From NCBI GenBank assembly GCA_021613535.1, contig CP075496.1, positions 5,270,001-5,334,000 of the forward strand: a DNA stretch of 64,000 nucleotides, given 5' to 3'. The translations under genes were made by a program, and so were the position numbers. The number at the start of each line of letters is the position of its first letter. The first letter of the stretch is position 1. Shown one piece after another: positions 4,492 through 64,000 of this stretch. The notes under the pieces were generated by a model. It was not told the DNA's origin, did no database searches, and saw only the letters and a program-made list of their open reading frames with translations. Origin of the DNA: Adineta vaga. Its lineage: Eukaryota; Animalia; Rotifera.

Positions 4492-5790
4492 TTAAACATG
4501 ATTGAGCACGTGTAGATTTCCTGATGATGGATCCGTGGTATTATTATGTTTCTTTTCTATCGTATTCGTATTTCTTGCTTTCTTTAGTCGAGTTTTGCTG
4601 GAAACAGTCATCGATGGTTCTTCATCATCAGCTTCATTTTCGATTGATTGATGTTTTGCATGTTTATCTACGTCGTGATTAGATGACTTTTTTGTTGAAC
4701 GAGATTCAGTAAGAGTTTCTTCATCATCATTATCAATTGCTGTTAATGGTAAAGATTTTGCTAATTTACTTTCAATACCATATGTTTTTGCCCAGAAGAG
4801 AAGATCATCAAATGAATTTTGTTGTGTTGTAACTTTTTTCGATAAATTTTCGAATATTTCATTTAATTCCGTCGTTTGTTTTTGTGTATGCATGGCTTGA
4901 ATGAAATCTAATAAAGTTTCTCGAATTTGATTTAATCGTTCTTCTTCTTCATATTGACACTGTTTAAATATTTCCATGGCTTTATTTCGATAAACTTTCT
5001 GAGCACTTTTATGTCGATGTTTTGTTTCAATAACTTTTTCTTCAATATCACTTAGAATAATTCGTTTCTTATTCTGATCATCATTGGCACGTGCTAAATG
5101 CTTTTCCGTTGTTGATGGATCTAATTCAAGGATTTCACAAGCACGTTCAGCTGTACGTACAGCTTCTTGTGCTTTCTTCTCTTGTGCACGAAGTTTATCC
5201 AATTCATCAGACACTTCACGTAATGATGCATAAGCAGTTTTGAATAATTTCTTAAATTCATTGGATCGACGATGTTTCCGACTAGAACGGAAGCGTTCAC
5301 TTATATATGTTTCATCGATATGTAGACGATATTTGTCAATGACTTTTTCAACTTCATTACTAGTTGCTTCTTTAACACGAGCAAGTTCTTTTGTCATACG
5401 AACAACATCAAGTTGAGCGCGTTTTGTTGTATGATACGAGACAAGAGACGATTGTTGTTTTATTCGTGTCGTCCATCTTTCAGCAAACGAAATAAAGATA
5501 CGAGCTTGTTCGCGTTCGTTATCACGGTAATCTTCCATTAATGCAATCAAATCCATTGCAATACCATACCCTACAAAAGAAAAAAGATAAGAACAAAAAT
5601 CAATTATAAAGAAGAAAATAATCAAATCAAACTTACCGTTATCAAGACGTTCGAGTGCAGCACGGTAATTTTCTTCATCAAAAAAATTCTTTCCAATGTA
5701 TTCATTTAGTGGATAATTATCAGCGTTTCCACTAGTTAATCGATTAGCAGCAAGTGCTTCTTTAAATCCGACACAAGCACCAATATTCAT
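4492..5790 (-). CDS. PACSIN/syndapin-like F-BAR domain protein lacking the C-terminal SH3
   Basis: NFFDEENYRAALERLDNGYGIAMDLIALMEDYRDNEREQARIFISFAERW resembles the PACSIN F-BAR start ([25 protein letters not shown]...W); later EEERLNQIRETLLDF and DDLLFWAKTYG. One 66-nt stop-free intron (5571-5636) is read through by the ORF track. Confidence 0.75.
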   Translation of the reverse strand: MNIGACVGFKEALAANRLTSGNADNYPLNEYIGKNFFDEENYRAALERLDNGKFDLIIFFFIIDFCSYLFSFVGYGIAMDLIALMEDYRDNEREQARIFISFAERWTTRIKQQSSLVSYHTTKRAQLDVVRMTKELARVKEATSNEVEKVIDKYRLHIDETYISERFRSSRKHRRSNEFKKLFKTAYASLREVSDELDKLRAQEKKAQEAVRTAERACEILELDPSTTEKHLARANDDQNKKRIILSDIEEKVIETKHRHKSAQKVYRNKAMEIFKQCQYEEEERLNQIRETLLDFIQAMHTQKQTTELNEIFENLSKKVTTQQNSFDDLLFWAKTYGIESKLAKSLPLTAIDNDDEETLTESRSTKKSSNHDVDKHAKHQSIENEADDEEPSMTVSSKTRLKKARNTNTIEKKHNNTTDPSSGNLHVLNHV

Positions 5791-20862: not shown

Positions 20863-21819
20863 ATGAATCAATTAATAACATATAATAATCCGAATGATGG
20901 TGTCTCCTCTCGACGGTATACAGCTTTTCCACTTAATTCAACTTTAATAAGTACATATACATCAGATACAATTCGTAGTATTATTAATCATGCTATTACT
21001 GGAAAACCTTATAGTAAGTTGTTTCTTTCTTTTTCGCGAAAATCTTTATTCAACGATTGAACGAATGTGATCTTGTTTTGTTTTGTTTTGCTTTGCTTTC
21101 TCTTAGCAACAGCTGTTTGGATTCGCATTAGTCGAGTTGGTATCCAAATCAAAGCACAAGATCCTCAAATAGCTCGAACACGTATACCAGTTTTTATTCC
21201 TATTGCTCATGTTCATGATATTTTTATGCAACCAAACATTAATAATGTGATTTGTATTGTTTATGAAGAAGTCAAATCAAATATGAAAGGTGTTCTTCTT
21301 TATGTTGTTCATCCATCCGATGCGCATTTAATACGTGATGATTTTCGTCACGTTAAACAATTATCATATGGAAAAGGTATCGAAAATCAAATTATGGTTG
21401 AAGCGAAATCACCTGATAATAAGCAATTAGTATCACCAACGTCGCAAAAATCTAATGATATTTTTCGTAATAACAAAGCCAATCGACAACAATCACCCAA
21501 ACGAATTCTATATGTACGTGATAGTGATATTAATGCAACAAGAGAAAAGACACCATCATCAGCACCACCATTGCCACAACTTAGCTATACACCATTCAAT
21601 AACAGTTATCATAGTAGTCGAGATGAAAGTGCCAATTATAGACGTCATAAGAGTCCAAGAAAAAACAAGACAGAACAATCATCGAGTAAAACAGCAAGTG
21701 ATAGTGGAAGTAAACATCGACGTAAACATCGATCACGATCACCACAAAAAGCATCGAAACCAAAAGTAGCTGAGGATAATGTAAGTCAACAATCACCACC
21801 AGAACCACAGGCGGATCAA

Positions 21820-21851
<32 letters not shown>

Positions 21852-22669
21852 ACAGCAATTACAACAACAGCAGCAGCAACTACAGCAACAACAACAACAA
21901 CAACAATTACTTTTTCAGCAGCAACAAATTGCTGCTTGGCAAGCTGCTCAACAAGCACCTGTTGTTCCTATGGGAATTTATAATCGGTAATAAGCTTATT
22001 TAATATTTATTATAGTTTGTGTTATCTTCAAATTATTTCTCTTCTAGTTATGTACCTAAAGTAATACCATTACCCACGGGTGAAAAAATCAAAACGACTC
22101 TTTCACCATCGGATACGAATGGTATGATTGTTGCTCATATTGAACCTCAACAAGCTACGAATAGTGATTCATACAGTCATTCTCCAACACGTTCTCGTTC
22201 TGCTTCACCAAAACGTCCGGATCAACCTTATCGAAGTCGTCCATTAAGTGCAGAAAATGCTGAAGCATCTGCTATTCTTATTCAATCATCTCACCATCGT
22301 CATCATCATCACCATCGACGGCAACAGATGAATGGACAAAGTCATTCAGTTTCGAAACCCGAATCAAAACTTTATAATACAATATCTCATCCATCTCGTA
22401 TACGTTTAAAATATGGTCCACCAACGAATAACAATAATAATAATAATAATACGGAATCAGAAAGTGAAACCAAACAATATCTAAAACGACTAATTGATGA
22501 TATGCATGCGATGAAGGTAGAAATGAATAAAATGCGTTTGGCATCTTCATCAGTTGGGACTTCGCGTGGACGTTCAGATTCATTACGATTGAATTTAAAA
22601 GAATTACGCAGTGATATTGATGCTATTCGTGCTCGAATGGCAATGACACCACGAGTTTTTCAGCCATAA
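20863..22669 (+). CDS. Unidentified protein: N-terminal PTB/PH-like beta-rich region, RS/basic linker, polyQ, His-rich patch, C-terminal coiled coil
   Basis: Three exons (~20863-21013, 21107-21986, 22049-22669) with canonical splice sites and long open frames. The fold call rests only on sequence pattern (VWIRISRVGIQIK...IPIAHVHDIF...VICIVYEE...AHLIRDDF). Confidence 0.65.
21817..21906 (+). repeat. Coding CAA/CAG polyglutamine tract
   Basis: Mixed CAA/CAG codons giving ~28 Gln interrupted by two Leu. Confidence 0.9.
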
Positions 22670-56186: not shown

Positions 56187-58139
<1,953 letters not shown>

Positions 58140-59352: not shown

Positions 59353-61215
59353 ATGTTACAAAATCAAAATCAACTCGTACCATTTAATAAAGTTCAAGGA
59401 GTTGCATCGACAAATGTACATGCATATTCCAATGGTGATGATGATTTTTTCTCTGTTGAACGTCATTATTTACATGGGATTTTTATGGGTTTCAAATGGC
59501 AATGTGTTGAATTTGCTCGTCGATGGTTATTAATGCGTAAAAGTTGTGTCTTTCCACCAATTCCATGTGCGGCTGATATGTGGAACGATTTGAAATATGT
59601 CGAATGTGTTATCGATGGTAAACAATTTTCATTAAAATGCTATCCAAATGGTTCACCGCATTCTCCTAAACCTGATTCATTATTAATCTATCCTCGTAAT
59701 GAACAATTTCCATATGGTCATGTTGCAATTATTTGTGATATTGTACCTGGTTTTATACGTATTGCTGAACAGAATTATATTTATCATAGTTGGTCAGATA
59801 ATTATGCACGTGAAATATCTTTAAAATGTAAAGAAGATGGAAATTATTATATAGAAGATGAAGATGAAATATGTGGATGGATAGAAATTGATGATAATAA
59901 TCAATTGAAACCATTAGATGAAACACGACTTGATTTAATTTTAAAACAATATCAAAAAGCAACACCAATTGGTAAATTAGAACGTTCATCCATAACTGAT
60001 AAAAGTTTTCATTTAATTGATCATTGGTTAAATGAAGAAGATCCTGCGGAGAAATATTTTATAAAATTATATGGACCTAATTTAATTCGTGCTGATACGG
60101 ATACTTTACCTTATTATAAAGTTGATCAAGATTTAACTTTATCAATTGGAAGTACATCGAATGAATTACATCAAATGTTTTTAGATGCAACGAATTATGT
60201 TGTTGAAAATGATGATTTATTGAAACGATTTTGTATACCTGAAGTTTTCTGGCCAAAACTTCGTCAATCATGGTTAAATGAAAAAGATTTAAGTCTAACT
60301 GGACGATTTGATTTAGCTTTTGATGGTCAACAATTGAAAGTTTTCGAATATAATGCTGATAGTGCATCAGCTTTATTTGAAATTGCTGTTATTCAAGAAA
60401 AATGGGCACAAGCAGTCAAACTTGATCATACATTCATGTCGGGATTTCAAATTCATCGTTTATTATTGAAAAATTGGCAATTAATTTGTACAAATTTAAA
60501 TGTTAAACGTGTTCATTTACTGATTGATGATGATCAAGATGAAATCTTAACATCTTTATATATGCAATATGTTTTAAAACAAGCAAATATTGATTCGAAA
60601 TTATGTATTTTATACAATGATTTATTTTGGAAAGATTCGAAAATTGTAGACAATGAAGGTTATGAAGTTGAATTAGTTTGGAAAACATGGATGTGGGAAA
60701 GTATATTTAGTGATTATCTTGAAGGAGAAAAAACAGGAAAATTAAATGAAAAAATAAATGGACAACATCCGCGTCTATGCGAAATCCTATTAAATGATCA
60801 GATTAAAGTTATTGAACCTCTATGGAAAGTTATTCCAAGCAATAAAGCAATTCTACCTGTTCTATGGTCAATGTTTCCTAATCATCCACATCTTCTACGT
60901 AGTGAATGGACACTACCTGATGATTTAAAACAAAATGGATATGTTAAAAAACCAATTGTTGGACGTTGTGGACATAATGTCACATTATATGGTGCGAAAG
61001 GAGATTCTATACTTGATGAAACACAAGGTAAATTTACTGATCGCGATTTTATTTATCAACAATTATTTTCTTTACCAAAATATGATGATTATTATGCAAT
61101 ATTTGGTAGTTGGATAATTCATGGTCTATTTTCAGGATTTGGAATACGTGAAGATAAAAAATTGATTACCGATGCCGACAGTCCAGTAACAGCATGTTGT
61201 ATAGTATGGAGATAG
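59353..61215 (+). CDS. Bifunctional trypanothione/glutathionylspermidine synthetase-amidase (N-terminal CHAP amidase plus C-terminal ATP-grasp synthetase), intronless
   Basis: 620-aa single ORF. Amidase triad motifs KWQCVEFARRW (Cys), GHVAII (His), IAEQN (Glu); synthetase motifs GRFDLAFD, FEYNADSAS, WKTWMWES, EPLWKVIPSNKAILP, KKPIVGRCGHNV, GIREDKKLIT. Confidence 0.93.
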   Translation: MLQNQNQLVPFNKVQGVASTNVHAYSNGDDDFFSVERHYLHGIFMGFKWQCVEFARRWLLMRKSCVFPPIPCAADMWNDLKYVECVIDGKQFSLKCYPNGSPHSPKPDSLLIYPRNEQFPYGHVAIICDIVPGFIRIAEQNYIYHSWSDNYAREISLKCKEDGNYYIEDEDEICGWIEIDDNNQLKPLDETRLDLILKQYQKATPIGKLERSSITDKSFHLIDHWLNEEDPAEKYFIKLYGPNLIRADTDTLPYYKVDQDLTLSIGSTSNELHQMFLDATNYVVENDDLLKRFCIPEVFWPKLRQSWLNEKDLSLTGRFDLAFDGQQLKVFEYNADSASALFEIAVIQEKWAQAVKLDHTFMSGFQIHRLLLKNWQLICTNLNVKRVHLLIDDDQDEILTSLYMQYVLKQANIDSKLCILYNDLFWKDSKIVDNEGYEVELVWKTWMWESIFSDYLEGEKTGKLNEKINGQHPRLCEILLNDQIKVIEPLWKVIPSNKAILPVLWSMFPNHPHLLRSEWTLPDDLKQNGYVKKPIVGRCGHNVTLYGAKGDSILDETQGKFTDRDFIYQQLFSLPKYDDYYAIFGSWIIHGLFSGFGIREDKKLITDADSPVTACCIVWR

Positions 61216-61900: not shown

Positions 61901-64000
61901 ATGACAACCACTAATAATCAGCCCGAACGACTTGATACATTACAAAGACTTGAACTTGAATCAACTATTGGATTTGAAGGTGAATATCTTTCTCATCATA
62001 AAATGAATCTTCTTCGGGTTGGAAATGTTTATTTTTGTCTATTGATACTTTAGGAAAAATTCCTCATGGTCTTAAATTACACCCCGATCGTATTCATATG
62101 GTTTATCCATTAGGATGCAATTTAGTTATTGAAAATTTACAAACACGACAACAAGAATTTCTTCTTGGACATAATAATAATATTTCATGTGTCACAATTT
62201 CAAATAATGGCAAATATATTGCTTCAGGTCAAGTAACATTTATGGGTTTTAAAGTAAATTTTTCATCTCACTTCTGTTTTACTGTAAAAAAATGTATTTG
62301 GTGAAATTCTTTTCTAGGCTGATATCATTGTTTGGGATTATGCAAATCGTGAACCATATGCTCGTCTTGTTTTACATAAAGTCAAAATTGAAGATTTAGT
62401 TTTTTCAGCATCCGATCGTTTTTTGATTTCACTTGGTGGACAAGATGATGGTGCTATTATTGTTTGGAATATTGATACGAAAGAACCCGTATGTGGTAGT
62501 CCAGCTCAACATAAAAGTGCGGGCATTACTTATTGCTTAGCTGCATCGAAAGAAGATGATTTACAATTTTATAGCGCTGGAAAGTAAGTCAAGAAATCGA
62601 ATGATCGTCTTATATCATAAATATATTCCGAAATTTAGTGGTACTATTCGATTCTGGCAATTAGATGTAGCTAATCGAAAAATTCGAGCAACTGATATCA
62701 ATACAGGTGTCATTAAACGTATTGTCAAATGTATGACTGTATGTAAATCAAACGTTTGAATTGATAGACAGAAAAAGAAGGCGTCTAATATTTGCTATCT
62801 GTAGGTATCACCCGATGGTATACATCTCTATTGCGGAACAACAACAGGTGATATACTTATGATCTATATTCCGGCTACTCAATTTAAAACAATGGGACCT
62901 GAAAAGAAAAAATATTCGATGGGTATTACGGCCATGCAAGCATTAGTGAATGGTGATGTTTTAATTGGAACAGGCGAAGGAAAAATTCATTTGACAGAAA
63001 AAGAAACATTCAAATCGTTAAAGTAGGCTTTAACCAAGATTAAAAAAATAAATTGTTAATCTTCGGTCTTTCATCGTAGATCTTTACAAGCATTGGGTGA
63101 AGTTACTTCATTGGCATTGAGAGGAGAAGGTCACATGGTATGTTATGTTCCTAATCACATTTAGTAATAAAATATACAGAAGATGGTTAAACTATTTTGA
63201 GAGTACCATACATTTTTCTAATTGGTACCATTACTTGAAACTTGCGATTGTTTTATGTAGATTTTTATTGGCACAGATCGATCACATATCTATAAAGTAA
63301 ACTATGGTGATTGGAAAATGGAATTAATTAATACATGTCATAATTCACCAATCAATGATGTTGCTTTTCCATTGTAAGTGTCGAATAATAATTCAAGAAT
63401 ATATGTATAAATCTCTCATTTTATTTCTCAGTGGTACTTCGGAGTTATTTGGTACATGTAGTTATCAAGATATTCGGTAAATGAGAAGAAAAATCCTTTT
63501 CAAATGTTACCATTTCCTCTAATTTTAGTATATGGCATGCACCAACTGGAAATGAATTATTACGAATTTCTCAAGCAAACAAAACATGTAATTCCCTTTG
63601 CTTTACTCGTGATGGCAAAATGATCGTTAGGTAATACAAAGATTTCATTGTATTTATGAAAAATGAACGTTTTTTTTATACATCTAGTGGTTGGGATGAT
63701 GGTCGTATTCGTGCATTTTATCCTGAATCAGGTCGTGAAATGTTTACTATCAATGATGCACATCATCGTGGTGTTACAGCCGTTGCTGTTACAAATGATT
63801 GCCGTCGTATAATTAGTGGCGGTGGTGAAGGTATGATTCGAGTTTGGCAAATCAATGCCAAGTCACAAGAACTATTAGCAACAATGAAAGAACATAAAAA
63901 TGCCGTTGTTTCGATTCGTATCAATAAATCTGATACAGAATGTGTTACAGCATCACTCGATGGTACTTGTATCATTTGGAATTTGAAGTAAGAAAAATGA
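61901..64000 (+). CDS. CFAP52: Cilia- and flagella-associated protein 52 (WDR16), 5' part; runs off the window
   Basis: LELESTIGFEG|KIPHGLKLHPD..HMVYPLG, YIASGQVTFMGFK|ADIIVWD, SLGGQDDG, SGWDDGRIRAFYPESGR, ISGGGEGMIRVW; WD40 repeats. Confidence 0.92.

What the first reader, a model, noticed from the sequence alone, without database searches (positions are those of the whole stretch)
59353..61215. Intact intronless trypanothione/glutathionylspermidine synthetase-amidase in an animal chromosome: likely horizontally acquired thiol-polyamine redox system
Seen: the only long intronless gene among intron-rich neighbours (GPT, CFAP52), with host-like AT-rich codons and intact amidase (C-H-E) and ATP-grasp motifs. 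From my recollection of the family, diagnostic segments (AYSNxxDxFFSxER, RRWLLxRK, DSLLIYP, WKTWMWES, KKPIVGR, GIREDxxxITxxxSP) look closer to kinetoplastid TryS/GspS than to E. coli Gsp. Knowledge: these enzymes conjugate glutathione to spermidine, are typical of bacteria and trypanosomatids, and are absent from typical animals. Inference: a domesticated foreign gene providing Gsp or trypanothione as an antioxidant, plausibly for desiccation or radiation tolerance. I recall foreign trypanothione-synthesis transcripts being reported in bdelloids, so presence may not be new; the product and partner reductase are the open questions. No reductase or tryparedoxin is in this window.
Basis: partly seen in the sequence, partly recalled or inferred. 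Interest (0 to 1): 0.8.

Follow-up and report, generated by a model that had tools for sequence, protein, structure and literature searches.

The report
Foreign trypanothione-synthetase-like gene in bdelloid rotifer
A bdelloid rotifer (Adineta vaga) chromosome carries an intact, intron-free gene for an enzyme that joins glutathione to spermidine. The gene was acquired long ago from a non-animal source and is still under selection, but its presence in bdelloids was already published in 2012.

Summary
Window 59353-61215(+) is one uninterrupted 620-codon ORF. It encodes a full-length CHAP amidase plus ATP-grasp glutathionylspermidine/trypanothione synthetase, and every catalytic residue I checked is intact.

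- **Location:** the genome has the size and layout of the Adineta vaga chromosome assembly, and the gene sits mid-chromosome between intron-rich GPT and CFAP52.
- **Not an artefact:** the same gene order occurs in A. ricciae and Rotaria assemblies. A second A. vaga copy on another chromosome shares the upstream flank.
- **Constraint:** GC3 is 12% (host-like) and dN/dS is 0.05.
- **Origin:** bdelloid sequences form one clade whose best-supported sister is kinetoplastid TryS (88/92). An AU test does not exclude another placement (p 0.33).
- **New here:**
  - A. vaga has four full-length intronless paralogs.
  - It also has five amidase-only derivatives.
  - It has no trypanothione reductase. The one GR/TR-type gene looks like a glutathione reductase.
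  - It has many tryparedoxin-like WCPPC genes.

Foreign GspS/TryS transcripts in bdelloids were published by Boschetti et al. 2012, so the core finding is already known. The product (Gsp or trypanothione) and the recycling route remain untested. The scan had also flagged a paralog of this gene elsewhere in the same genome.

The parts
59353..61215 (+). Complete intronless CDS (620 codons plus stop) of a bifunctional glutathionylspermidine/trypanothione synthetase-amidase homolog
   Evidence: ORF listing. Pfam CHAP + GSP_synth. End-to-end alignment to PDB 2vob and 2io7. The A. ricciae ortholog is 90% identical with the same length and start. AF2 model pLDDT 91.7.
59380..59883 (+). N-terminal amidase (CHAP, papain-like) domain, residues ~10-177. 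Catalytic codons: C51 (59503-59505), H123 (59719-59721), E139 (59767-59769). Oxyanion residue N141 (59773-59775).
   Evidence: Match to the E. coli Gsp amidase fragment 3a2z, residues 10-177. Pfam CHAP 45-141. Residue mapping onto LmTryS C59/H130/D146/N148.
60112..61200 (+). C-terminal ATP-grasp synthetase domain (GSP_synth), residues 254-616. ATP/Mg/transition-state residues R318, D320, E332, N334, K498, K533, R599. Polyamine-site acids E343, D392, D396, E397.
   Evidence: Pfam GSP_synth, 260 bits. Residue mapping onto LmTryS R328/D330/E344/N346/K513/K548/R613 and E355/D403/E407/E408.
61183..61212 (+). Short C-terminus ending ...ACCIVWR. It lacks the ~18-residue acidic tail that blocks the amidase site in Leishmania TryS. 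The Cys-Cys pair is present in all bdelloid sequences in the alignment.
   Evidence: Alignment of C-termini. Description of the LmTSA tail in PMC2427367.
56196..58139 (+). Context: upstream neighbour, an intron-rich alanine aminotransferase (GPT2-like) gene with at least 7 exon blocks
   Evidence: tblastx exon blocks collinear with the C1 homoeolog. Last exon 111 bits to human ALT2 3ihj. Aminotran_1_2 gene at the same position in A. ricciae and Rotaria.
62035..64000 (+). Context: downstream neighbour, the CFAP52 (WD40) gene, which runs off the window end
   Evidence: First exon piece 104 bits to CFAP52 chains. A 624-aa WD40 gene sits at the same position in A. ricciae and Rotaria.

Best explanation
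This is a real, functional A. vaga nuclear gene that descends from a single ancient horizontal acquisition of a TryS-type glutathione:spermidine ligase-amidase. The acquisition predates the Adineta-Rotaria split and the duplication that produced the C4/C1 gene pair.

**Inferred mechanism, from conserved residues and solved homologs.**
- The ATP-grasp domain phosphorylates the glycine carboxylate of GSH. R318 acts with Mg2+ held by D320/E332/N334, and K498/K533 bind the phosphates.
- A spermidine amine bound by E343/D396/E397 attacks the acyl phosphate to give glutathionylspermidine (Gsp). A second round may give trypanothione; I put this at about 50-60% for at least one paralog.
- The N-terminal Cys51-His123-Glu139 amidase hydrolyses the conjugates back to GSH and spermidine.

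**Inferred recycling route (about 40-50%).** The genome has no trypanothione reductase, the amidase site is not capped by a C-terminal tail, and five extra amidase-only paralogs exist. I therefore favour an E. coli-like, reductase-independent cycle.
- Oxidative stress would inactivate the amidase cysteine, so conjugates accumulate. They would then protect protein thiols and feed the tryparedoxin-like oxidoreductases.
- On recovery, amidases plus ordinary glutathione reductase would recycle the oxidised conjugates.

**Shown:** gene integrity, domain and residue conservation, genomic integration, purifying selection, the paralog census and the absence of TR.

**Inferred:** catalytic activity, the product, the recycling route and the physiological role.
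For: - **Identity:** Pfam CHAP + GSP_synth. 475 bits to LmTryS and 358 bits to EcGspSA. All catalytic residues are kept. The AF2 model has pLDDT 91.7. Its whole-chain TM is 0.75-0.78 at 4.3-4.7 A to LmTryS, against 0.65-0.66 at about 11.5 A to EcGspSA.
- **Integration:** the GPT - gene - CFAP52 order is conserved in two A. ricciae and two Rotaria sp. assemblies. The C1:7.18 Mb copy (67% identity) has a collinear upstream flank. GC3 is 0.12.
- **Constraint:** dN/dS is 0.053 against A. ricciae.
- **Foreign origin:**
  - The gene is intronless among intron-rich neighbours.
  - Apart from bdelloids, no animal appears among the named hits of the top 120.
  - The bdelloid clade has 100/100 support and is sister to kinetoplastid TryS, including Bodo, at 88/92.
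  - Boschetti 2012 found no significant metazoan match.
- **No TR:** TIGR01423's best locus is the GR-like gene. Its exons sum to about 265 bits against a cut-off of 738. Its exons score 119-128 bits to GR against 72-110 to TR.
- **Amidase radiation:** five CHAP-only ORFs have intact catalytic residues and nest in the bdelloid clade.
- **E. coli precedent:** the amidase + GR recycling model and the Cys59 sulfenic-acid switch are described in PMC6272389.
- **Tryparedoxin-like genes:**
Against: - No biochemical or expression data were obtained.
- The NCBIfam equivalog for E. coli-type GspSA is not reached (501 bits against a cut-off of 882).
- The sister position to TryS has only moderate support. 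An AU test does not reject bdelloids lying outside a TryS+GspS kinetoplastid clade (p 0.33).
- No sequence feature I could find separates Gsp-only from trypanothione-forming enzymes. The R222-E614 pair and the loop length are shared with kinetoplastid GspS.
- The TR-independent cycle is an analogy with E. coli, not an observation.
- The tryparedoxin-like genes are almost as similar to mollusc nucleoredoxin-like proteins (52-56%) as to kinetoplastid tryparedoxins (50-55%), so they may be native.
Confidence: 0.8

Rival explanations
1. Trypanosomatid-style redox system. The enzyme makes trypanothione, which drives the expanded tryparedoxin-like oxidoreductases and peroxiredoxins. A non-orthologous reductase, such as a TrxR/Trx pair or an adapted GR, re-reduces trypanothione disulfide.
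For: - The ML sister is the TryS clade, not GspS.
- The predicted inter-domain arrangement is TryS-like.
- There are at least 21 WCPPC Thioredoxin_8 loci. Their best solved matches are tryparedoxins (119 bits), and they group beside kinetoplastid tryparedoxins on the tree (88/87).
Against: - No TR ortholog exists.
- The only GR/TR-type gene keeps GR-type N-terminal features: GGVRSSR with the Arg equivalent to human GR R37, and no TR insertion. I read these from the sequence against remembered GR and TR sequences. It also scores higher to GR.
- The tryparedoxin-like genes carry an intron and are nearly as close to mollusc NRX-like proteins.
Confidence: 0.3
2. Gsp-only enzyme. All bdelloid paralogs stop at mono-glutathionylspermidine, as E. 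coli GspSA and kinetoplastid GspS do, and 'trypanothione synthesis' is only an annotation label.
For: - TR is absent.
- The protein has a short C-terminus like E. coli's.
- The AU test allows bdelloids to lie outside the TryS lineage.
- The published claim rests on KEGG/EC assignment of transcripts only.
Against: - The protein scores higher to TryS than to any GspS: 475-508 bits against 265 for kinetoplastid GspS and 358 for E. coli.
- The loop at Lm 251-261 has TryS length, and the E. coli loop is shorter.
- T. brucei TryS also has a short C-terminus.
Confidence: 0.35
3. Assembly chimera or contaminant DNA (a protist or bacterium) wrongly placed in the rotifer chromosome.
For: The gene is intronless and has no animal relatives outside bdelloids.
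Against: - The same three-gene order occurs in five independent assemblies of three species (and the window).
- A homoeologous copy has a collinear flank.
- GC3 is 12%, matching the host.
- Four paralog lineages are each shared by Adineta and Rotaria.
- Boschetti 2012 mapped the transcript to a genomic contig that also holds metazoan genes.
Confidence: 0.01
4. Vertical inheritance from an early eukaryote, with loss in nearly all other animals.
For: Homologs occur in scattered eukaryotes: prokinetoplastids and ciliates, oomycetes and Plasmodiophora per PMC7052976. Unnamed eukaryotic contigs also carry them.
Against: - All four paralogs are intronless.
- No opisthokont other than bdelloids appears among the named hits.
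- The bdelloid clade sits beside a kinetoplastid clade rather than in a species-tree position.
- This reading would require very many independent losses.
Confidence: 0.03
5. Neofunctionalised ligase/amidase. After transfer and duplication, the paralogs act on different amines or thiol peptides (for example other polyamines, or phytochelatin-like peptides) rather than on GSH + spermidine.
For: - There are four diverged paralogs at 55-67% identity.
- One paralog is paired tail-to-tail with a phytochelatin-synthase-like gene.
- A Rotaria-only clade has lost catalytic residues.
- Some amidase-only copies have secretion-like signals.
Against: The window copy keeps every GSH-, ATP- and polyamine-site residue that was checked, with only conservative changes (E407 to D, S571 to T). 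It is under strong purifying selection.
Confidence: 0.1

Closest known systems
Kinetoplastid trypanothione synthetase-amidase (e.g. Leishmania major TryS, PDB 2VOB/2VPS; T. cruzi, T. brucei and Bodo saltans TryS)
   Same: - It has the same two-domain architecture.
- Identity is 40-43% over the full length, with 475 bits to 2vob.
- All catalytic residues are shared.
- The predicted domain arrangement is TryS-like, TM 0.75-0.78.
- It is the ML sister clade at 88/92.
   Different: - The bdelloid genes sit outside the TryS clade, not within it.
- The amidase acid is Glu (as in E. coli) rather than Asp.
- The acidic C-terminal tail that blocks the Leishmania amidase is missing.
- The bdelloid end is ...ACCIVW[KR].
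- The host genome lacks trypanothione reductase.
- The product has not been determined.
[quoted passage not shown]
   Same: - It has the same domains and catalytic residues, including the Cys-His-Glu amidase triad.
- It has a short C-terminus.
- It also operates in a genome without a dedicated Gsp or trypanothione reductase.
   Different: - The match is weaker: 358 bits, 33-34% identity.
- It falls below the equivalog cut-off (501 vs 882).
- The R222-E614 pair is absent in E. coli, and the E. coli loop is shorter.
- Whole-chain superposition is poor (rmsd about 11.5 A).
- It forms a separate clade.
Kinetoplastid glutathionylspermidine synthetase (Leptomonas/Lotmaria/Crithidia-type GspS, ~719 aa)
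   Same: It has the same family and domain order and keeps the catalytic residues.
   Different: It is much more distant (34% identity, 265 bits), longer, has insertions, and forms a separate 100/100 clade.
Foreign GspS/TryS transcripts of Adineta ricciae (Boschetti et al. 2012, PLoS Genet, PMC3499245)
   Same: It is the same gene family in a sister species. The A. ricciae ortholog of the window gene is 90% identical and syntenic. The paper already proposed HGT from a trypanosome relative and an antioxidant role.
   Different: That work was based on transcripts and KEGG assignment. The paralog census, ohnolog synteny, amidase-only derivatives, TR absence and tryparedoxin-like expansion reported here do not appear in the passages I read (tryparedoxin: 0 occurrences).

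Membership tests
Bifunctional glutathionylspermidine/trypanothione synthetase-amidase family (CHAP + GSP_synth) | N-terminal CHAP/papain-like amidase domain with a Cys-His-acid triad and an Asn oxyanion residue | tested here: met
   Pfam CHAP 37.6 bits (cut-off 26). C51/H123/E139/N141 align to LmTryS C59/H130/D146/N148.
Bifunctional glutathionylspermidine/trypanothione synthetase-amidase family (CHAP + GSP_synth) | C-terminal ATP-grasp synthetase domain with the seven conserved triphosphate/Mg/transition-state residues | tested here: met
   Pfam GSP_synth 260 bits (cut-off 29.3). R318 D320 E332 N334 K498 K533 R599 are all conserved.
Bifunctional glutathionylspermidine/trypanothione synthetase-amidase family (CHAP + GSP_synth) | Full-length collinear similarity and fold match to solved members | tested here: met
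   Residues 8-615 align to 2vob (E 3e-141) and 31-617 to 2io7 (E 8e-106). Foldseek E is 1e-57 to 1e-61 for both.
Bifunctional glutathionylspermidine/trypanothione synthetase-amidase family (CHAP + GSP_synth) | ATP-dependent ligation of GSH to spermidine, and hydrolysis of the conjugate | not testable with these tools
   This needs recombinant enzyme assays.
Trypanothione synthetase sensu stricto (EC 6.3.1.9) | Placement inside the kinetoplastid TryS clade | tested here: inconclusive
   The bdelloid clade is sister to the TryS clade, not inside it (88/92; 80/71 on the reduced set). AU p 0.33 does not reject bdelloids lying outside TryS+GspS.
Trypanothione synthetase sensu stricto (EC 6.3.1.9) | Second glutathionylation (Gsp to trypanothione) | not testable with these tools
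   No diagnostic residue was found. The pocket contacts described in PMC3581523 are mostly backbone, and R211-E600 is shared with GspS.
Trypanothione synthetase sensu stricto (EC 6.3.1.9) | Co-occurrence with trypanothione reductase in the same genome (system-level feature) | tested here: not met
   TIGR01423 has no hit near its cut-off (best locus about 265 bits summed vs 738). PF02852 loci are GR-like, TrxR-like and DLD-like only.
E. coli-type GspSA equivalog (NCBIfam NF007801) | Score at or above the curated equivalog cut-off | tested here: not met
   501.4 bits against a cut-off of 882.
Horizontally acquired bdelloid gene | Linked to metazoan genes, no metazoan homologs outside bdelloids, nested among non-metazoan sequences, and host-like composition | tested here: met
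   Synteny. Named hits are bdelloids and then kinetoplastids. Tree. GC3 0.12. The absence claim rests on the top 120 and top 150 lists only.

The most novel reading that the evidence does not exclude
Bdelloids run a polyamine-thiol system that came from a TryS-type gene but works without trypanothione reductase. Four ligase-amidase paralogs make Gsp and/or trypanothione. A radiation of stand-alone amidases derived from the same gene, some apparently secreted or membrane-anchored, controls turnover. Oxidised conjugates are recycled through amidase + glutathione reductase, as proposed for E. coli. Reducing power is passed to an expanded family of tryparedoxin-like WCPPC proteins. This would be a hybrid architecture not described in any organism.
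Probability: 0.3. Interest if true: 0.7.

Novelty: already known. Interest (0 to 1): 0.4.

Why it matters
Bdelloids survive desiccation and very high radiation doses, and unusually strong antioxidant protection of their proteins has been proposed as the reason. A foreign glutathione-spermidine conjugating system is one candidate for that protection. Its presence was published in 2012, but no paper in the searched library reports a chemical test of it in rotifers.

This report narrows what remains open:
- The gene is old, fixed, duplicated and under strong constraint.
- The classical partner reductase is absent from the genome.
- The amidase half has multiplied on its own.

That gives two concrete experiments: thiol LC-MS, and recombinant enzyme assays. 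The first would show whether an animal makes trypanothione or glutathionylspermidine. The second would show how it recycles them without trypanothione reductase.

Tried and rejected
- **The look-up of encoding contigs for the window protein:** not on record. I used the orthologs instead.
- **Downstream synteny of the C1 homoeolog:** no CFAP52 within 10 kb. Only the upstream flank is collinear.
- **Bacterial relatives:** the pattern scan of GTDB genomes returned a single locus, a Desulfopila MAG at 35% identity. Its patterns are tuned to close relatives, so this says little about bacterial diversity.
- **AU test on the full 52-row mixture-model set:** it did not finish in three attempts. I reran it on 31 rows with LG+G4.
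- **A residue or loop signature separating TryS from GspS:** none was convincing.
- **The sixth Pyr_redox_dim locus (C2:2.32 Mb) as a hidden reductase:** it gives only weak DLD-like matches.
- **Foreign origin of the tryparedoxin-like genes:** unresolved.
- **Spliced gene models:** the GR-like and tryparedoxin-like genes were searched exon by exon by reference. The joined coding sequences were not assembled or searched.
Full report
**1. Observation**

Window 59353..61215 (+) is a single ATG-initiated ORF of 620 codons, the longest in the 64-kb window. At about 30% GC, roughly 8% of random codons are stops, so a chance open frame of this length has a probability near 1e-22 (my estimate).

- Pfam finds CHAP at residues 45-141 and GSP_synth at 254-616.
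- NCBIfam's E. coli-type bifunctional equivalog NF007801 matches end to end but below its cut-off (501 vs 882 bits).
- Against solved structures the protein aligns over residues 8-615 with Leishmania major trypanothione synthetase-amidase (475 bits). It aligns over 31-617 with E. coli GspSA (358 bits).

**2. Organism and genomic setting**

The window is C4:5270001-5334000 of a 100.8-Mb, six-contig genome. The paralogs found in it match NCBI proteins of Adineta vaga (I4U23 locus tags) on contigs of the same lengths, 18,146,847 and 20,354,754 bp. The gene lies at 5.33 Mb of a 15.2-Mb chromosome, so it is not subtelomeric.

- The upstream piece at 57858-58139 is the last exon of an alanine aminotransferase (111 bits to human ALT2). 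That gene matches its homoeolog in at least seven separate exon blocks.
- The downstream ORF at 62035 is the start of CFAP52 (104 bits).
- Gene GC (0.30) equals window GC (0.305), and GC3 is only 0.12.

**3. Not an artefact**

- The A. ricciae ortholog (90% identity, also 620 aa) lies in the order PAX - unknown gene - aminotransferase - this gene - WD40/CFAP52 in two assemblies.
- The Rotaria sp. Silwood1 ortholog (80%) lies between the same two neighbours in two assemblies.
- Within A. vaga, the copy at C1:7.18 Mb (67% identity) has an upstream flank collinear with the window's GPT and the gene before it. Its downstream flank is not collinear.
- In the tree, the window lineage and the C1 lineage are sisters (100), and each contains Adineta and Rotaria members. 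The gene was therefore already next to GPT before that duplication and before the Adineta-Rotaria split.
- Two Didymodactylos sequences also fall in the bdelloid clade.
- dN/dS against A. ricciae is 0.053, with dS about 1.

**4. Family census in the genome**

A six-frame search finds four full-length, stop-free, intronless copies: C4 (the window), C1:7.18 Mb, C3:14.99 Mb and C1:11.44 Mb. They are 55-67% identical to the window copy. It also finds five ORFs of 217-247 codons that cover only the amidase domain.

- The amidase-only ORFs hit Pfam CHAP and keep the Cys, His, Glu and Asn residues.
- They fall inside the bdelloid clade on an amidase-domain tree (95), so they derive from the same acquisition.
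- Some of them, and some relatives in other bdelloids, have signal-like N-termini and hydrophobic C-termini.
- A Rotaria-only clade of full-length proteins has lost catalytic residues in both domains.

**5. Relatives and origin**

In the word-index search, the named hits down to about 44% identity are all bdelloids (Adineta, Rotaria, Didymodactylos). They are followed by kinetoplastid TryS at 39-43%. The exhaustive representative search gives 244 clusters at E<=1e-30. Those I could name are:

- prokinetoplastids (Papus, Apiculatamorpha);
- kinetoplastid GspS at 34% and 265 bits;
- Bodo saltans TryS.

A careful ML tree (LG+C20+F+G4 PMSF, 52 rows) gives bdelloids 100/100, TryS 100/100 and bdelloids+TryS 88/92. 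Kinetoplastid GspS, the E. coli/Desulfopila clade, the prokinetoplastids and unnamed protist-like clades all lie outside.

On a 31-row set the same sister grouping has 80/71 support. An AU test does not reject a tree in which TryS and GspS of kinetoplastids are one clade with bdelloids outside (delta lnL 6.75, p 0.33). So 'TryS-like donor' is the best-supported reading, not a proven one.

PMC7052976 reports homologs in Stentor, Plasmodiophora and oomycetes. I also saw eukaryote-like metagenomic contigs carrying it.

**6. Catalytic anatomy**

I took residue roles from PMC2427367 and PMC3581523 and mapped them by alignment.

| Role | LmTryS | Window protein |
|---|---|---|
| Amidase triad | C59 / H130 / D146 | C51 / H123 / E139 (Glu, as in E. 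coli) |
| Oxyanion residue | N148 | N141 |
| Triphosphate / Mg / transition state | R328 D330 E344 N346 K513 K548 R613 | R318 D320 E332 N334 K498 K533 R599 |
| Polyamine / GSH contacts | E355 D403 E407 E408 T457 M459 S462 | E343 D392 D396 E397 T445 M447 S450 |
| Pair absent in E. coli and Desulfopila | R222-E614 | R211-E600 |

- The R222-E614 pair also occurs in kinetoplastid GspS, so it does not discriminate between products.
- The protein lacks the roughly 18-residue acidic tail that plugs the amidase site of Leishmania TryS. It ends ...ACCIVWR, and the Cys-Cys pair is present in all bdelloid sequences in the alignment.
- An AlphaFold2 model built from a 55-sequence alignment is confident (pLDDT 91.7, pTM 0.89).
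- As a whole chain it superposes better on LmTryS (TM 0.75-0.78, rmsd 4.3-4.7 A) than on EcGspSA (TM 0.65-0.66, rmsd about 11.5 A). This agrees with the different domain orientation of the two crystal structures described in PMC2427367. It is a prediction, not a measurement.

**7.

- *Reductase.* PF02852 finds six loci.
  - By sequence they are one GR/TR-type gene (C4:7.46 Mb), two TrxR-like genes, a DLD pair and one weak DLD-like gene.
  - The trypanothione-reductase equivalog TIGR01423 has no hit near its cut-off. Its best locus is the GR-type gene, at about 265 bits summed over exons against 738.
  - That gene's N-terminal exon scores 119-124 bits to glutathione reductases and 72-77 to TRs. 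Its C-terminal exon scores 128 against 110.
  - Read directly from the sequence against what I remember of GR and TR sequences, it has GGVRSSR, with Arg at the position of human GR R37. It also lacks the TR insertion before the redox-active CVNVGC.
  - I conclude there is no TR ortholog in this assembly.
- *Tryparedoxin.* PF13905 finds at least 21 matches, including a four-gene tandem array.
  - They carry CPPC(R) motifs split by an intron.
  - One exon's best solved matches are tryparedoxins (119 bits, against 68 for nematode or chelicerate 16-kDa thioredoxins).
  - The nearest non-bdelloid proteins are kinetoplastid tryparedoxins (50-55%), closely followed by mollusc nucleoredoxin-like proteins (52-56%).
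  - A small tree puts the bdelloid clade on the kinetoplastid side of an 88/87 split.
  - Their origin is unresolved.
- None of these genes is in the window.

**8. Mechanism**

*Shown:* an intact, constrained, integrated gene with all residues needed for both activities.

*Inferred from the solved homologs:* ATP-dependent formation of a GSH acyl phosphate, attack by a spermidine amine to give Gsp, possibly a second round to give trypanothione, and hydrolysis by the Cys51 amidase.

TR is absent, the amidase site is uncapped and the amidase domain has multiplied. I therefore favour a cycle like the one proposed for E. coli in PMC6272389.
- Peroxide converts the amidase cysteine to a sulfenic acid.
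- Conjugates accumulate and form mixed disulfides with protein thiols.
- Amidase plus glutathione reductase later return everything to GSH.

A trypanosomatid-style flow through the tryparedoxin-like proteins is compatible with this and may coexist with it. My estimates are:
- Gsp formation, about 90%;
- trypanothione formation by at least one paralog, about 50-60%;
- TR-independent recycling via amidase + GR, about 40-50%.

**9. What is known**

- Boschetti et al. 2012 (PMC3499245) reported foreign GspS and TryS transcripts in A. ricciae. They attributed them to a trypanosome relative, proposed an antioxidant role in desiccation tolerance, and mapped the transcript to a genomic contig that also holds metazoan genes.
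- Eyres et al. 2015 (PMC4632278) looked at glutathione and trypanothione orthologs in Rotaria.
- A 2020 review (PMC7730656) states that rotifers produce trypanothione but cites only the transcript study.
- My full-text searches found no biochemical demonstration.

The core finding is therefore already known. The additions here are the paralog and ohnolog structure, the amidase-only derivatives, the absence of TR and the tryparedoxin-like expansion.

The scan had also flagged a paralog elsewhere in this genome next to a half-size phytochelatin synthase (s1-498767). I confirmed a 237-aa Phytochelatin-domain ORF tail-to-tail with the C3:14.99 Mb copy.

**10. Limits**

- No expression or read-level test could be made.
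- Absence from other animals rests on the named entries of two top-hit lists.
- The product cannot be read from sequence.
- Spliced models of the GR-like and tryparedoxin-like genes were examined exon by exon only. The joined sequences were not searched.

Noticed in passing
G000 loci L005 (C5:15.17 Mb), L006 (C3:3.9 Mb), L007 (C4:8.59 Mb), L008 (C2:1.94 Mb), L009 (C5:4.1 Mb): Five stand-alone amidase-only (CHAP) ORFs of 217-247 codons derive from the same foreign gene and keep intact Cys/His/Glu/Asn. Some (L006, L009, and relatives P0173 and P0225) have signal-like N-termini and hydrophobic C-termini, which suggests secreted or anchored forms.
   Followed up: partly
Proteins P0065, P0066, P0068, P0071, P0077, P0103 (Rotaria spp.): This Rotaria-only clade of full-length family members forms a long branch. 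P0065, the one member examined, has lost catalytic residues in both domains (Cys to Ser; R/D/E/N/K/K/R all replaced), so the clade may consist of pseudoenzymes.
   Followed up: partly
L019:217-930 (-), i.e. G000:C3 ~14.9914-14.9921 Mb: A 237-aa phytochelatin-synthase-like ORF (PF05023, 83 bits) lies tail-to-tail with the C3:14.99 Mb paralog. Together they form a pair of glutathione-modifying genes, both of a kind unusual in animals.
   Followed up: partly
G000 loci L030-L049, e.g. the tandem array at C2:805375-808205, plus C4:14.26 and 14.35 Mb: There are at least 21 tryparedoxin/nucleoredoxin-like Thioredoxin_8 matches with a CPPC(R) motif interrupted by an intron. Several end in Cys-rich CaaX-like tails. 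Their best solved matches are kinetoplastid tryparedoxins, and whether they are native or foreign is unresolved.
   Followed up: partly
L025 (G000:C6 ~3.7347 Mb, - strand): The thioredoxin-reductase-like gene has a last exon ending ...AAGCGGGSCG. From my recollection this resembles the Cys-x4-Cys C-terminal redox centre of apicomplexan TrxR rather than the GCUG of vertebrate TrxR.
   Followed up: no
L017:7331-8374 (+), downstream of the C1:7.18 Mb ohnolog: Two adjacent ORFs carry histidine-box motifs and a FA_desaturase Pfam hit (55 bits). To me they look like a carotenoid ketolase (CrtW)-type gene, possibly another foreign gene.
   Followed up: partly
L064 (metagenome scaffold ERZ19036562, 287 kb): A CHAP-only gene and two tandem CHAP+GSP_synth genes sit beside ankyrin and kinase genes. 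The called gene does not translate to the stored protein with code 11, which hints at another genetic code or a different gene model. The organism is unknown.
   Followed up: no
window 4492-5790 (-) and 21067-21990 (+): These are the two other long ORFs in the window (432 and 307 aa). Neither has a Pfam match.
   Followed up: partly
window 61183-61212 and bdelloid homologs: A C-terminal Cys-Cys motif (...CCIVW[KR] in the window lineage and its closest paralogs) is present in all bdelloid sequences in the alignment. It is absent from the kinetoplastid and bacterial enzymes, and its role is unknown.
   Followed up: no
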